From the NCBI RefSeq assembly GCF_036321535.1, contig NC_087450.1, positions 63,302,001 to 63,366,000 on the forward strand: 64,000 nucleotides of DNA, given 5' to 3'. The DNA comes from Camelus dromedarius. Lineage: Eukaryota. Positions within the stretch are counted from its first letter, which is position 1; each line of letters begins with the position of its first letter. A program made the translations under genes and the position numbers. The notes below the pieces were generated by a model, which made no database searches, was not told the DNA's origin, and saw only the letters and a list, made by a program, of their open reading frames with translations. Below, piece after piece: positions 1,634 through 38,780 of this stretch.

Positions 1634-2452
1634 AGGAAAGTCCTCTCCTCTACACGGTTTCTTGCTCGTCAGGTTTTGTGGCCGATGGGGGGTGTAGTCA
1701 AAGGGGAGAGGAACAACTGAGCTGACAACGCGCAGAGACTCGTCAGCAGGATGCACGTCTATATCCACGGCCGCAAAACCTCCTGGAAGGAAGTGGGAAA
1801 CGGACCACGGCTTCAGATACAGTATGTTGTGTGTTTAACACATCGTCGGTGGGAGGCCCAGGTAAACTCTGAGCTAAGACCCTTCACCCTAATCTTCATT
1901 CAGTATTCTAGTGCATCTAACACAAAAGCTGCTTGCTGTTAAGGACACTTCATCTGTAAGTCTGCAGCCAAGAAAGACCGAGCTTCACCTGAAGATCCTG
2001 ATTTGTACCCACGGATGCAGGGACAAGGTCGATAACCTGACACTGAAAAACGCCTGCCTGAGCATGTGCTGCAAGTCGTTCTGGACAGAAACCCTCGGGT
2101 TACTATTCTGTCAGGGAGTAGATGTGACTGTCACATCACTGCCCTCTAGCTTCCAATGAAACTATGCCCAACCTGACTGCAGTGTTTGGGGGTGTTTTTA
2201 ATGTAAAGCTCCGCAAGGAAAATACATTCATAAAACGTCAGGGAGAGCGCAAGTGATAAAATGCTGACAATGACAGTCTGCTCTGCGACAACGAAGGCCA
2301 GCGGTGGGACCTCTAGGTTCGGCGGAGGACCGAGTCCGGCAGGTCCTGCAGGACCACCCGTGGGCGGCTCTGCCTGGGGAGACCCTCTGGGCTCATCGGG
2401 GTGGGACAGTCTGGGACAAACCCCTGGGGCCTGCAGACGCGGGAGCACTGAC

Positions 2453-2590
2453 GTTCGCACTGTGGTTGCTGCCACTGACACAGAGGACGTCTTGCTTTTG
2501 AACTGTCAGTACCTCTTTCGTCAGCTTCAGCCGGACGTCGTAGGCGTGTCCAGACCCTGGGTCGCGCAGCGGTGCGGTCCTGGTTTTGGT
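2453..2590 (-). CDS. SNTG2: Gamma-2-syntrophin exon 2 (138 nt; N-terminal half of split PH1 domain)
   Basis: Acceptor ...CCCCACTGTCTCCGCAG|ACC, donor AAC|GTCAGT. Translates TKTRTAPLRDPGSGHAYDVRLKLTKEVLTVQKQDVLCVSGSNHSAN (46 codons), matching recalled human TKTTIALLYDEESENAYDIRLKLTKEVLTIQKQDVVCVGGSHQGRN in length and C-terminal two-thirds. Confidence 0.95.
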
Positions 2591-2769
2591 CTGCGGAGAC
2601 AGTGGGGACGGGGCAGTGAGGCCAGGGGAGCCTAGAGCTCGCCCGCACGGCCAGCACCGACGGCTGGTCCGTCCGCACTCGGCTGACGAGGGCCTGCCCA
2701 GCGTAACGCACAGCATTGGAATCTTTACTGTGTCTTCCCGAGTTGTCTTCAGAGAATTGGGTGTAAAAC

Positions 2770-35263: not shown

Positions 35264-37779
35264 TGGATCTTGTTAAACTGTTCATTAGGAAACATATCTC
35301 CTGGTCAAATCAGGGGATTCCCCATTTGAAAGATATGAATCTTGCTTTGGGGTCACGGACATCATCAAAAGTTCTACACCTGAGATCAGAGATGAGTCAG
35401 CAAGGATTAGGCGCATAACAGAAGTGTAAAAGCAACGGACAGCCTCCCCACGGGGTTCCTGCCTAACTCGTGCAGGGGTTCGCATCTCTCACCAGGTGAG
35501 TAAGTGCTTCCATTCCTAGACGCACATTCTAAACGGCCTGCCGTGGTCACACCTTCCTGTCCCCTGGCTCCTCGGAAGGACTCCCACATGGCTGGCTCTC
35601 CCCTGCTTCCAGCCCCTCAGACTGAAGCAGTGTTGCTGATTAAAAACAGAAAATGTGTGTTCAGCACAAATCCACAGCAGTGTTTGAACCCAAAGCAGGG
35701 CACACTCAGCACACCATACTGGTGGTTCTCCAGCCAGGGTCCATGCGGGACACAGGGAGGGTCGGGGATAAGGGTGTGAATTGGCTCAACTCAGGAAGCG
35801 TGTGTAACAGAGAGCAGCTACTTAAAGCCAAGGAGGAAAAAGCAGCTCCAGCACTGAACAAGCGACATTCAAATTTGGCCAAATTCTGATTTAAACAAGC
35901 AGCCACAAAGAACACATTGTGTTTCTGACTTCAAAAAATGTTTACAACCAGAAATATAATGGGTTTAAACCAACTTGCTTTGTTGTCATCATTTTTCTAA
36001 TTAGAAGCACTAAGTTCTCCTTCTTCACCGAAATGATTAAATAACTTTGTAAGTTCAATGATATTACAGATAGTTACTGATAAGAAAATCAGTAAATCTG
36101 CACGGTTGTCTAGTCTCCAATGATTCAAGTACAAACGAATGGCTGTTAAAGATTCATGGAGCAAAGGTGGACATGTCACTTTCCAGCAAACGTGCCAGCC
36201 ATGACTGTGTGCGATGAACGGTCCTGTTTTAAAAAGACATGTGTAAACAGAACATTCAGCAAATTCATTTTAAATGAGCAGAACCTGAATCTTTCAGCAG
36301 GCTGGAGCACACGCAGAACGTGTCTTCTATTTGTGAAAGCAGAGGGACCCTCCTGCTCTTGCCTGCTCTGTCATAATGCTGACATCGGTTCCCTGCCAGT
36401 GCAAGTCACATAGGTCGCATCGGAGAACCCAGGCCCTTATTGTAAAGGGAGCACTAATTACATCCTCAGTAAATGGGATGGAGCCCCTTGTCTGAGCCCC
36501 GCATTCAGTGTCTTAAAGGAGCCAACACTTAGCAGCCTGGAGAGAACTTATTTCAGGACCTCAGGTGACATGCTTTTGAAAACCTGAAGTTATTGCCCAT
36601 ACCCCTCAGCTGGGTCAAGCATGCAGTATGATGAACCCGCTTATTTGCTCCTCTATGTTCACCGCGGTTGTAAACAAGCCGGTTGTGGGACCACCGCAAG
36701 GAGACCTGCAGCTCCCACCCAGGGAGCATCGCTGTGAACTCAAGGCAGTGACGAAGCAGAGCGCCCCTGACTCCCAGCCGCTCTCTTTGCTCAAGCAGCT
36801 CACTTCCAGTTATTCCAAGCCCATCTAGCGGTTTAATTTCCAGTAGCTGGAAAACTGCTCCATGACAAAGAATGTAAAACACTCAACACGGAACTTTACG
36901 TGAAATTTAATTTCAAGATTTCGCACTAATGTCCCAGAATGATATAGCTTGGTGGAAGAGGCAACTATCTCTATGTACATTTTTTTTAAAAGAAAAACAT
37001 ACAAGAATTACTGCCCTGGTTTAGAGGCATTCTGACATGAGAATTTATAAAAGTCTTCAATCCACAGTCTGCTGAAACATTTGTCAGCCATCCTGAGAAG
37101 CACAGCTAAATACATGCCGGGTTTTTGGTCACTCCTGAGATCAGGGACTCTGCAGGGACAAACCCTACAGAAGGCGGTTACTGGGAGCACAGGGATTAGC
37201 CCATTAGCCCAGAGCCTCCGCGGCTCAGGATCCTTAAATTGTTTCCAGAACACTTCGGTTATGCTGTGAGTGGCAACTCGAAGGTTTCCAAGAACTTTTC
37301 GTTTTCGTCTGAGCCACATTTCTGTTTTCCCCCAGCAGTTCAGTTATTTAAAAATAAGAGGGTGGAGGGGGAGTCTCTTGGGGTAGGGATAGAACAGTTG
37401 TCACGCACAGGCTCTGTATTAAGGATTCGGTGCTGAGAGCTGAGCTGTCCCCTGAGTTGCTGGGCACTCGGCTAGGGCCCTCAGAATCGGGCAGAGGCCC
37501 CCAGGACCGAGCTGCGCCAGCGACCCCGACCCGCACCCATCCAGGGGCTCGCCTCCGCTCGACCCTGGGCTCCGAAGATGCACACAGGAAGATAGGAGGA
37601 GTGAATCCCCACTCCCCAGTTCTGGAAAACCTGGTTCCCACGGCCACAGAGCCCAAGCACCTGCCCAGCCAGCCTTCAAGACAGGGAGAAGGCAAAGCCC
37701 ACAGTTTCCATCTGGGATACTGGGGTTGGGGGACTGAGTGGTCAGGGCGCGAGAGCCCACTGTGCCCGGGGTCCTGGCG

Positions 37780-38780
37780 CCCGTCAGCCTGCACGAGCCC
37801 CCGGGGAGACAGGGATGGGGACGCCGGAAGGAAGGGGGAGCCGGGTGAGGAGGGGGCGTCGGGAAGGAAGGCGGAGGCGCAGCGGGGAAGGGGGCACGGG
37901 GTGAGGAGAGGGCGGGGGGAGGGAAAGGGGGCTCGGAGGGAAGGAGGGGGCGTGGGGGGAGAAAGGGACGCAGAGGGGAAGGCGGCGCGCGGAGGGAAGA
38001 AGGGGGCCGCGGGGGGGGGGCCCGAGAACGAACGACTGCGGGGGGCCGGCACTCACCTGCGGGGCACCAGCAGGCGGCCGGGGCGCCCGCCGTGGGTGGC
38101 CGGGGTCGGGGCTCCCTCGGCGCTCATCGCCCCCAACTCGGCGGGGCCCGCACTCCAGGCCGTGGGGGCTCAGCGCCGGGGCCCCCCGCAAGCAGCCAAG
38201 AGCCCCGCGGGCGCCGCCTCCGCGCCGCTCTGAGCTCGGGCTCCGCGGGCGGCGGCGGGAGGGGCCGAGCGCCGAGCCCCGCCCACGAGCCCCGCCCCCG
38301 CCTGCCTCCGGAGAGGAGGGGTTGCCAAGGGGCGGGGACCGGCTGCGGGCGCGGGCGCGGGCGCGGGCGGGGCGCGGAGAGCGCGGGCGCGGATGGGCTC
38401 CCACCGGTGGGGTCGAGGCCCGGGCGCTCGGGGCCCAGCGGGAGGATGATAGGTTTGGGTGCTGAGGCTCCCTCGGGCGGGCGCCCCCTTCCCGCCCCTG
38501 CCCCCTGCTTGATCTGACTGGGGTCGACCCTTAGACCACAGCGTGGCGCCCCTGGGCCTTCCAGGCCCTCGGACGGTCGCCACCGCGCTGCTTTCCGGGT
38601 CCCTAGGGACCGCCCCCCTGCGACCTGCCCTTCACACGGGCGCTGACGCTGGACCCCGGGGACCTCCAGGACAGGAAAGCGCACAAAAGCCTAAATGCGC
38701 GCACGCCCGCGCCCGGGCGCGGAGGCTCCGGGGGCGCCTGGGGCGCACGGCTGGGCCTGACCCTGGCCTCACACCCCAGA
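37780..38780. promoter_or_regulatory. SNTG2 promoter CpG island
   Basis: Very high GC and CpG density around exon 1; (GCGCGG)n/GGGCGG GC-box-like run at about 38345-38395; no obvious TATA. Confidence 0.85.
38057..38127 (-). CDS. SNTG2: Gamma-2-syntrophin coding exon 1 (71 nt, one base short of phase 0)
   Basis: Minus strand reads ATG AGC GCC GAG GGA GCC CCG ACC CCG GCC ACC CAC GGC GGG CGC CCC GGC CGC CTG CTG GTG CCC CGC AG|GTGAGT = MSAEGAPTPATHGGRPGRLLVP, colinear with recalled human MGTEGPPPPAASRGRQGCLLVPAR. Strong donor CAG|GTGAGT; lies in a CpG island. Confidence 0.88.

What the first reader, a model, noticed from the sequence alone, without database searches (positions are those of the whole stretch)
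38057..38127. SNTG2 exon 1 is one base short: canonical splicing gives a frameshift and early stop
Seen: ATG (38127) to donor (38057) is 71 nt, and exon 2 is in phase 0 at its canonical acceptor (2590). Joining them reads ..CGC AGA CCA AAA CCA GGA..TCC GGC TGA, a stop inside exon 2 that would be expected to trigger NMD. Recalled: human exon 1 has 72 coding nt ending LLVPAR; the first 22 codons align without gaps, so the missing base is in the last 5 nt (GTG CCC CG CAG versus an expected GTG CCC GCG CAG-like end). Exon 2 has no in-frame ATG, so simple AUG re-initiation cannot rescue the N-terminus. Inference: a lineage-specific loss or remodelling of the gene, a segregating allele, or a 1-nt assembly error in a GC-rich C run.
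Basis: partly seen in the sequence, partly recalled or inferred. Interest (0 to 1): 0.75.

Follow-up and report, generated by a model that had tools for sequence, protein, structure and literature searches.

The report
Camel SNTG2 first exon frameshift
The first coding exon of the camel gene for the synaptic scaffold protein gamma-2-syntrophin really is one base short, so the normal transcript hits an early stop, and two more one-base losses in the sister camel species suggest the gene is decaying in camels.

Summary
On the minus strand, ATG 38127 to the donor CAG|GTGAGT at 38057/38056 is 71 nt. Exon 2 (2590-2453, 138 nt) is phase 0, and the canonical join stops at TGA 2529-2527.

In about 160 vertebrate SNTG2 proteins, exon 1 encodes 24 residues ahead of the same exon 2.

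The window is a Camelus species, not alpaca. It is 98.95% identical over 29 kb to Camelus ferus.

An assembly slip is unlikely. Several DNA runs, including ones not flagged as the possible source, hold all sampled 31-mers around the exon. One-base gaps between the two camel assemblies run at only about 0.3 per kb.

In C. ferus, exon 3 is 56 nt instead of 57 and exon 5 is 43 nt instead of 44, each split across two frames.

Best reading (0.55): a real lesion in a gene that is decaying in camels.

Main rival (0.2): the frame is rescued by a camel-derived CAG|G acceptor 11 nt into exon 2, or by a weak donor after nt 60.

Not tested: RNA junctions, exon 1 in other camelids, and exons 3 and 5 in this genome.

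The scan had already noted the rescue acceptor on this window.

The parts
38057..38127 (-). SNTG2 coding exon 1: ATG plus 23 codons plus 2 nt, 71 nt in all, where orthologues have 72 nt (24 codons)
   Evidence: gap-free match to whale SNTG2 residues 1-22; orthologue N-termini
38049..38056 (-). Canonical donor, CAG|GTGAGTGC, a full match to the donor consensus
38060..38067 (-). Weak in-exon donor, CTG|GTGCCCCG, after coding nt 60. Used with acceptor 2590 it keeps the frame (...GRLL|TKTR...). It sits at the same position as the donor used in ruminant RefSeq models.
   Evidence: usage not tested
37900..38400 (.). CpG island around exon 1 (GC 0.82, CpG observed/expected 0.88), still undecayed
2591..2592 (-). 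Canonical acceptor AG of exon 2. It is the first AG after the conserved CTCAC branch-point candidate (A at 2617), with 16 of 20 upstream bases pyrimidines.
2453..2590 (-). SNTG2 exon 2, 138 nt, phase 0 to phase 0, with both splice sites intact
2527..2529 (-). Premature TGA reached after the canonical exon 1-exon 2 join
2580..2581 (-). Second AG (aaaccAG|G), 11 nt into exon 2. An exon starting at 2579 restores the frame (...LLVPRRTAPLRD...). The A arose by a G>A change shared by both camels and absent from the whale-like and bovid-like outgroups. Only 11 of 20 upstream bases are pyrimidines.
   Evidence: usage not tested
2570..2572 (-). Codon 31 is CCG (Pro) in this genome. It is CTG (Leu) in C. 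ferus, and Leu in 150 of 161 orthologues.

Best explanation
The missing base is real and at least common in this camel species. With the consensus donor at 38057 and the first AG at 2591-2592, the main SNTG2 transcript shifts frame after codon 23 and stops 22 codons later. It therefore cannot make the PDZ-PH scaffold protein. This lesion is probably one of several that mark SNTG2 as a decaying unitary pseudogene in Camelus, or at least mark the loss of its PDZ-containing long isoform. In the sister species C. ferus, exons 3 and 5, which encode the first half of the PDZ domain, each lack one base. Shown: the 71-nt exon, the stop, the k-mer support, and the two C. ferus frame breaks. Inferred: that the lesions co-occur in one genome, that the allele is fixed, and that no functional protein is made.
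For: 1. The sequence and frame are as described.
2. Exon 1 encodes 24 residues before the same phase-0 exon 2 in every full N-terminus among roughly 160 vertebrate SNTG2 proteins. The exception is ruminant RefSeq models, which use an earlier donor.
3. Runs X4 and X5 (samples S3 and S4, studies P3 and P4) are not flagged as the source. They hold 100% of 123 sampled 31-mers over 37500-38700. X4, X5, X25, X26 and X27 hold 100% of 18 words over 38057-38260.
4. The window and the independent C. ferus assembly differ by only 17 one-base gaps in 28.9 kb. Only one of these, in the window, lies where GC is 0.65 or more, so neither assembly shows GC-linked indel noise.
5. C. ferus exon 3 (L001 37748-37803) is 56 nt, with HRTVTL and RQPGGGLGLSVK in different frames and an in-frame TGA.
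6. C. ferus exon 5 (L001 42867-42909) is 43 nt, with EQTGMLFVG and DAVLQ in different frames.
7. All splice sites of C. ferus exons 2-6 are intact. About 0.03 such gaps are expected in 103 nt at the observed rate.
8. The only two exon 2 differences between the two camels are both non-synonymous. They fall at residues that are K in 151 of 161 and L in 150 of 161 orthologues.
9. Two homology searches and 20 cluster listings returned no camelid SNTG2 protein. This is weak evidence.
Against: No reads were laid, so zygosity and allele frequency are unknown. Exon 1 of C. ferus and exons 3 and 5 of this genome were out of reach, so co-occurrence of the lesions is inferred across two species about 1% apart.

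Amino-acid divergence of camel exons 2-6 is no higher than in deer or sheep. Substitutions shared by the two camels in exon 2 are 10 synonymous to 6 non-synonymous, roughly omega 0.2. Any loss of constraint must therefore be recent relative to the roughly 60-My camel stem, yet three indels in about 410 nt is many for a young pseudogene.

All splice sites, the ATG and the CpG island are intact. Two in-frame splice alternatives exist. Exon 3 skipping is an annotated isoform in whales and deer, so only the exon 5 break is unavoidable.
Confidence: 0.55

Rival explanations
1. The deletion is real but the gene is still functional. The exon 1-exon 2 junction has been remodelled, so the protein is made from transcripts that use the camel-derived acceptor CAG|G at 2580/2579. 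That gives a protein 4 residues shorter (...LLVPRRTAPLRD...). Alternatively, transcripts use the weak donor CTG|GTGCCC after nt 60 with acceptor 2590 (...GRLL|TKTR...).
For: Both joins are exactly in frame. The AG at 2581-2580 arose by a G>A change shared by both camels and is absent from the whale-like (ACCGGG) and bovid-like (ACTGGG) outgroups. Ruminant RefSeq proteins are 535 aa and join ...GRLQ directly to TKTG. This shows that a 12-nt donor shift at this same junction is annotated in a related lineage. The second half of exon 2 carries only conservative changes (I>V, I>V, I>L).
Against: The canonical AG is the first AG after the conserved CTCAC branch candidate and has the better pyrimidine tract (16 of 20 against 11 of 20). 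The in-exon donor matches the consensus poorly and competes with a perfect donor 11 nt downstream. By established splice-site rules both rescues should therefore be minor. The G>A is a CpG transition and could be chance. In C. ferus the frame breaks again in exons 3 and 5. Leu31, retained under this model, is Pro in this genome.
Confidence: 0.2
2. It is a segregating loss-of-function allele in an otherwise intact, functional gene. The reference individual and some others carry it, and a 72-nt allele also exists.
For: Runs X10-X14 hold only 94-97% of the sampled words over 37500-38700, so each differs somewhere in that 1.2 kb. Where they differ could not be seen.
Against: At least four samples from three studies not flagged as the source hold every sampled word. 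The further frame breaks in C. ferus argue for a gene-wide process rather than a private allele.
Confidence: 0.1
3. It is a one-base consensus error of this assembly in a GC-rich C run, and the true exon is 72 nt.
For: The site lies in 82% GC DNA with a CCCC run. No read pile-up was obtained.
Against: Contigs of several independent runs hold 100% of the sampled 31-mers. About 3 of the 123 sampled words are expected to cover any one base, so a 1-nt difference should lower the share. The window has only 9 one-base gaps against C. ferus in 28.9 kb, and just one where GC is 0.65 or more.
Confidence: 0.05

Closest known systems
Vertebrate SNTG2 (gamma-2-syntrophin) 5' exon structure, e.g. Orcinus orca XP_049551858.1 and human SNTG2
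   Same: Same start (MSAEG...), the same ...GRPGRLLVP motif, and the same phase-0 exon 2 (TKT...AYD[IV]RLKLTKEVLT[IV]QKQDV...SAN).
   Different: Exon 1 is 71 nt instead of 72. Camel exon 2 carries residues seen in none of 161 orthologues (R28, P35, L60; E26 in C. ferus), and P31 in this genome replaces a Leu found in 150 of the 161.
Ruminant SNTG2 RefSeq models (535 aa; Bubalus, Cervus, Odocoileus, Ovis, Bos javanicus)
   Same: The 3' end of exon 1 has been altered in a related cetartiodactyl lineage, and the N-terminus is 4 residues shorter than the 539-aa norm. That is the same size change the camel rescue joins would give.
   Different: In ruminants the change is an in-frame 12-nt donor shift (LQ|VSAR, where the Val codon supplies the GT), with no frameshift. 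In camel the consensus donor leaves the exon out of phase.
Unitary pseudogenes of mammals (single-copy genes lost in one lineage through frameshifts while still at the orthologous locus)
   Same: Orthologous position, recognisable exons with intact splice sites, and small frame-breaking indels in several exons.
   Different: The lesions were seen in two different camel genomes, not yet in one. No stop or substitution excess is shown, expression is unknown, and most of the coding sequence (exon 7 onward) was not examined.

Membership tests
SNTG2 orthologue, 5' coding exons | Exon 2 peptide homologous to SNTG2 residues 25-70 | tested here: met
   47 library hits to the 40-aa exon 2 peptide. Named SNTG2 proteins carry the same segment. 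tblastn of orca SNTG2 against the window gives 81% identity over 47 aa.
SNTG2 orthologue, 5' coding exons | Exon 1 peptide (MSAEG...LLVP) about 35 kb upstream on the same strand | tested here: met
   gap-free match of residues 1-24 at 38127-38056; the same motif in whales, horse and shrew.
SNTG2 orthologue, 5' coding exons | Exon 1 of 72 nt ending in phase 0 | tested here: not met
   71 nt. This is the finding itself.
Unitary pseudogene | Frame-disrupting lesion confirmed in data independent of the assembly | tested here: inconclusive
   K-mer shares of 1.00 in independent runs support it.
Unitary pseudogene | Several independent inactivating lesions in the same gene | tested here: inconclusive
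   Exon 3 (56 nt) and exon 5 (43 nt) are frame-broken in C. ferus. They lie outside this window, so they were not seen in this genome.
Unitary pseudogene | Relaxed selection (dN/dS near 1) on the lineage | tested here: inconclusive
   The two camels differ by 2 non-synonymous and 0 synonymous changes in exon 2. Changes shared by the camels are 10 synonymous to 6 non-synonymous, and there is no amino-acid rate excess over deer or sheep. The sequence is too short to decide.
Unitary pseudogene | Loss of a productive transcript | not tested
   No RNA run held exon 1 words, and no junction data were available.
Frameshift compensated by a shifted splice site | An alternative site that restores the frame exists | tested here: met
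   Acceptor at 2580/2579 and donor after nt 60.
Frameshift compensated by a shifted splice site | The alternative site is the one used in mRNA | not testable with these tools
   Needs RNA reads across both exons.
Frameshift compensated by a shifted splice site | The downstream reading frame is intact | tested here: not met
   In C. ferus the frame breaks again in exons 3 and 5. This is untested in this genome.

The most novel reading that the evidence does not exclude
Camels repaired a first-exon frameshift by evolving a new acceptor. A lineage-specific G>A made CAG|G exactly 11 nt into exon 2, so the 71-nt exon 1 reads on in frame. This would parallel the ruminant 12-nt donor shift and make the SNTG2 exon 1-exon 2 junction a recurrently re-engineered site in cetartiodactyls. 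For this to hold, the C. ferus exon 3 and 5 breaks would have to be species-specific or bypassed.
Probability: 0.15. Interest if true: 0.6.

Novelty: new member of a known kind. Interest (0 to 1): 0.4.

Why it matters
SNTG2 encodes a neuronal PDZ-PH scaffold of the dystrophin complex. Its N-terminus and PDZ domain are conserved from fish to mammals. In the human literature the gene is listed as autism-related (PMC13115841).

If camels lack the canonical protein, they are a natural knockout of this gene. That would be one more lineage-specific gene loss to weigh in camelid biology.

In practice, gene models for camel SNTG2 that silently repair or skip these exons should be treated with caution. 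If the junction is instead rescued by the new acceptor, it would be a clean example of a frameshift compensated by splice-site evolution.

Tried and rejected
No letters of 37270-37306 were sent to any search tool afterwards. I worked beside them.

2. RNA.

3. Exon 1 in other camelids. The C. ferus locus L001 stops about 7 kb short of exon 1. Exact look-ups of six ORFs over exon 1 found nothing, but that test was flawed because the references carried GTG starts and stop codons. A profile search with the two ORFs that span the site found nothing. Pattern scans of metagenome and prokaryote genome contigs gave only chance bacterial matches.

4. Camelid SNTG2 proteins. None appeared among the best 120 hits of two searches, or among the members shown for 20 clusters (up to 15 per cluster). 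This is weak evidence, because only the best 120 are shown.

5. Other look-ups. P0010 and the window's 107-aa exon 2 ORF are not on record.

6. L002. I first took it for a llama-like relative, but it is only about 74% identical and carries the whale exon 2 peptide, so it serves as an outgroup.

7. Upstream start in the rescuing frame. There is no ATG in the 206-codon open frame, and openness is expected at 82% GC.

8. Alternative first exons. Whale 519/520-aa isoforms use the same exon 1, and other alternative starts are 1-5 residue predictor stubs.

9. Other checks. Rfam found nothing in the window. Paper searches for SNTG2 with alpaca, camel or gene loss found nothing relevant.

Full report
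**What is in the sequence.** On the minus strand an ATG sits at 38127-38125. The reading frame MSAEGAPTPATHGGRPGRLLVPR runs for 23 codons and leaves two bases (AG) before a perfect donor, CAG|GTGAGTGC, at 38057/38056. The coding exon is therefore 71 nt. About 35.5 kb downstream, the acceptor ...ctccgcag|ACC at 2590 opens an exon that reads TKTRTAPLRDPGSGHAYDVRLKLTKEVLTVQKQDVLCVSGSNHSAN in phase 0. It ends at 2453 before GTCAGT, which makes it 138 nt. Joining the two exons shifts the frame and reaches TGA at 2529-2527. That is 45 codons in all, 74 nt before the exon 2/3 junction. Exon 2 has no in-frame ATG.

**What the exons are.** The exon 2 peptide finds SNTG2 proteins in the 1.8-billion representative library. 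Named gamma-2-syntrophins from fish to mammals share the layout. That layout is a 24-residue exon 1 peptide ending LLVP[AT][RW], then TKTG[IT]ALL[YH]DE...AYD[IV]RLKLTKEVLT[IV]QKQDV...SAN, then HRTVTLRRQPVGGLGLSIK. Predicted alternative-start isoforms such as M|TKTG, and exon 3-skipping isoforms, fix the exon borders and phases. The camel exon 1 peptide aligns without gaps to whale SNTG2 through LLVP. The lost base therefore lies in the last two codons: whale ...VPAR against camel ...VPR plus AG. I could not obtain outgroup DNA for exon 1, so the exact ancestral bases remain unknown.

**The organism.** The best library hit, P0001, is a mis-assembled 'hypothetical protein CB1_001753004' of Camelus ferus. 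Its contig is collinear with window 1-31097 at 98.95% identity over 28.9 kb, introns included. That is the divergence expected between two Camelus species and is far too little for alpaca against camel. The window is therefore a camel, most likely the dromedary by this distance, although that was not proven. An RNA run labelled tick metagenome that holds part of the stretch fits a camel host.

What remains is indirect but fairly strong.
- Runs X4 and X5 are not flagged as the possible source and come from different samples and studies. They hold 100% of 123 sampled 31-mers over 37500-38700.
- X4, X5, X25, X26 and X27 (four samples, three studies) hold 100% of 18 words over 38057-38260.
- About one word in ten is sampled, so about three sampled words should cover any one base. 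A 1-nt difference should therefore lower the share.
- The window and the independently built C. ferus assembly differ by only 17 one-base gaps in 28.9 kb (9 in the window, 8 in C. ferus). Only one gap lies where GC is 0.65 or more. Neither assembly shows indel noise in GC-rich DNA.

I put a consensus error at about 5%. Runs X10-X14 hold 94-97% of the words, so each differs somewhere in the 1.2 kb. I could not see where, so a segregating 72-nt allele is not excluded.

**Consequences for the mRNA.** The canonical donor is a perfect consensus match. The canonical AG (2592-2591) is the first AG after a CTCAC branch-point candidate that is conserved in camel, whale-like and bovid-like sequence, and 16 of the 20 upstream bases are pyrimidines. 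By established rules of 3' splice-site choice it should dominate, which gives the frameshifted message. Two in-frame alternatives exist.
- An AG 11 nt into exon 2 (2581-2580, exon starting at 2579) gives ...LLVPRRTAPLRD...
- A weak donor CTG|GTGCCC after nt 60, joined to acceptor 2590, gives ...GRLL|TKTR...

The first alternative was also noted on this window by the first stage (s1-175402). Its A is derived: both camels have ACCAGG where the whale-like and bovid-like outgroups have ACCGGG and ACTGGG. That is suggestive, but the change is a CpG transition, and its pyrimidine tract is poor (11 of 20).

**Decay elsewhere in the gene.** The C. ferus locus extends 17 kb past exon 2 and holds exons 3-6.
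- Exon 3 (L001 37748-37803) is 56 nt rather than 57. HRTVTL and RQPGGGLGLSVK lie in different frames, and the in-frame reading meets TGA.
- Exon 4 (58 nt) and exon 6 (42 nt) are intact.
- Exon 5 (L001 42867-42909) is 43 nt rather than 44. One G is missing from a G run, and EQTGMLFVG and DAVLQ lie in different frames.
- All ten splice sites are intact.

At the observed gap rate, about 0.03 one-base gaps are expected in these 103 nt, so two are very unlikely to be assembly noise. Exon 3 skipping is an annotated isoform in whales and deer, but exon 5 encodes the PDZ core and cannot be bypassed in that way. If these breaks are shared by the window's species, no splice rescue at exon 1/2 would give a normal protein.

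**Selection.** The picture is mixed.
- For relaxation: the only two exon 2 differences between the two camels are non-synonymous. K26E in C. ferus falls at a residue that is K in 151 of 161 orthologues. L31P in this genome falls at a residue that is L in 150 of 161. Several camel residues (R28, P35, L60, G81, T108) occur in none of the 161.
- Against an old loss: substitutions shared by both camels in exon 2 are 10 synonymous to 6 non-synonymous, roughly omega 0.2. Amino-acid divergence of exons 2-6 is no greater than in deer or sheep.
- Twelve of the 16 shared changes are AT to GC. This bias looks like biased gene conversion and could itself explain some odd residues.

Three one-base losses in about 410 nt is many for a young pseudogene. 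I note this tension and cannot resolve it.

**A related precedent.** Ruminant RefSeq proteins are 535 aa and join ...GRPGRLQ directly to TKTG. Ensembl-type models read ...LQVSAR|TKTG at 539 aa. The intron in the RefSeq form begins with the GT of the Val codon. The 3' end of exon 1 has thus moved by 12 nt, in frame, in a sister lineage. This shows that the last four residues of exon 1 are dispensable, and it keeps the remodelling rival alive.

**Verdict.**
- Best reading (0.55): a real one-base loss that breaks the canonical transcript, and one of several frame lesions in a gene decaying in camels.
- Rival (0.2): a functional gene rescued by a shifted splice site.
- Rival (0.1): a segregating allele.
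- Rival (0.05): an assembly error.

No paper in the searched library links SNTG2 to loss in camelids. The kind of event is well known, and this would be a new member of it. The decisive checks could not be run here: reads at the site, exons 3 and 5 in this genome, exon 1 in other camelids, and RNA junctions.

Noticed in passing
window 1-31097 against L001 (C. ferus KB017874.1): The window is 98.95% identical to Camelus ferus over 28.9 kb, introns included.
   Followed up: yes
L001:37748-37803 and L001:42867-42909: In C. ferus, SNTG2 exon 3 is 56 nt (expected 57) and exon 5 is 43 nt (expected 44). Each is split across two frames, and all flanking splice sites are intact. The same exons of this genome lie about 6 and 11 kb beyond window position 1 and deserve a look.
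   Followed up: partly
proteins P0219, P0221-P0223, P0225, P0281 against P0280, P0167: Ruminant RefSeq SNTG2 is 535 aa because exon 1 ends 12 nt early (...GRLQ|TKTG), with the GT of the Val codon of LQVSAR serving as donor. Ensembl-type models keep 539 aa.
   Followed up: partly
window 37500-38700: RNA runs labelled reproductive system metagenome (X15, X16) hold 39% and 27% of the sampled words of this 1.2 kb, but none of 38057-38260 (exon 1 plus leader). Something next to exon 1 is transcribed, possibly a divergent promoter transcript or intron-proximal RNA.
   Followed up: no
window 2453-2590 (exon 2): Twelve of the 16 substitutions shared by the two camels against whale-like and bovid-like outgroups are AT to GC. 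This bias looks like biased gene conversion in this GC-rich region.
   Followed up: partly
L001:10001-36416: GenBank protein EPY75191.1 of C. ferus (216 aa, 'hypothetical protein') is a chimeric model. It embeds SNTG2 exon 2 between unrelated upstream and downstream pieces, and the true exon 1 was not annotated.
   Followed up: partly
window 2393-2716, minus strand: An intronic ATG at 2716 opens a 107-aa ORF that runs in frame through exon 2 and stops 19 codons past its donor. Gene predictors use this kind of stub start in other species (for example bison MPPTSALFQ|TKTG). There is no evidence that it is used.
   Followed up: no
They lie in intron 1, about 750 nt from exon 1, and were not sent to any search tool afterwards.
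   Followed up: no
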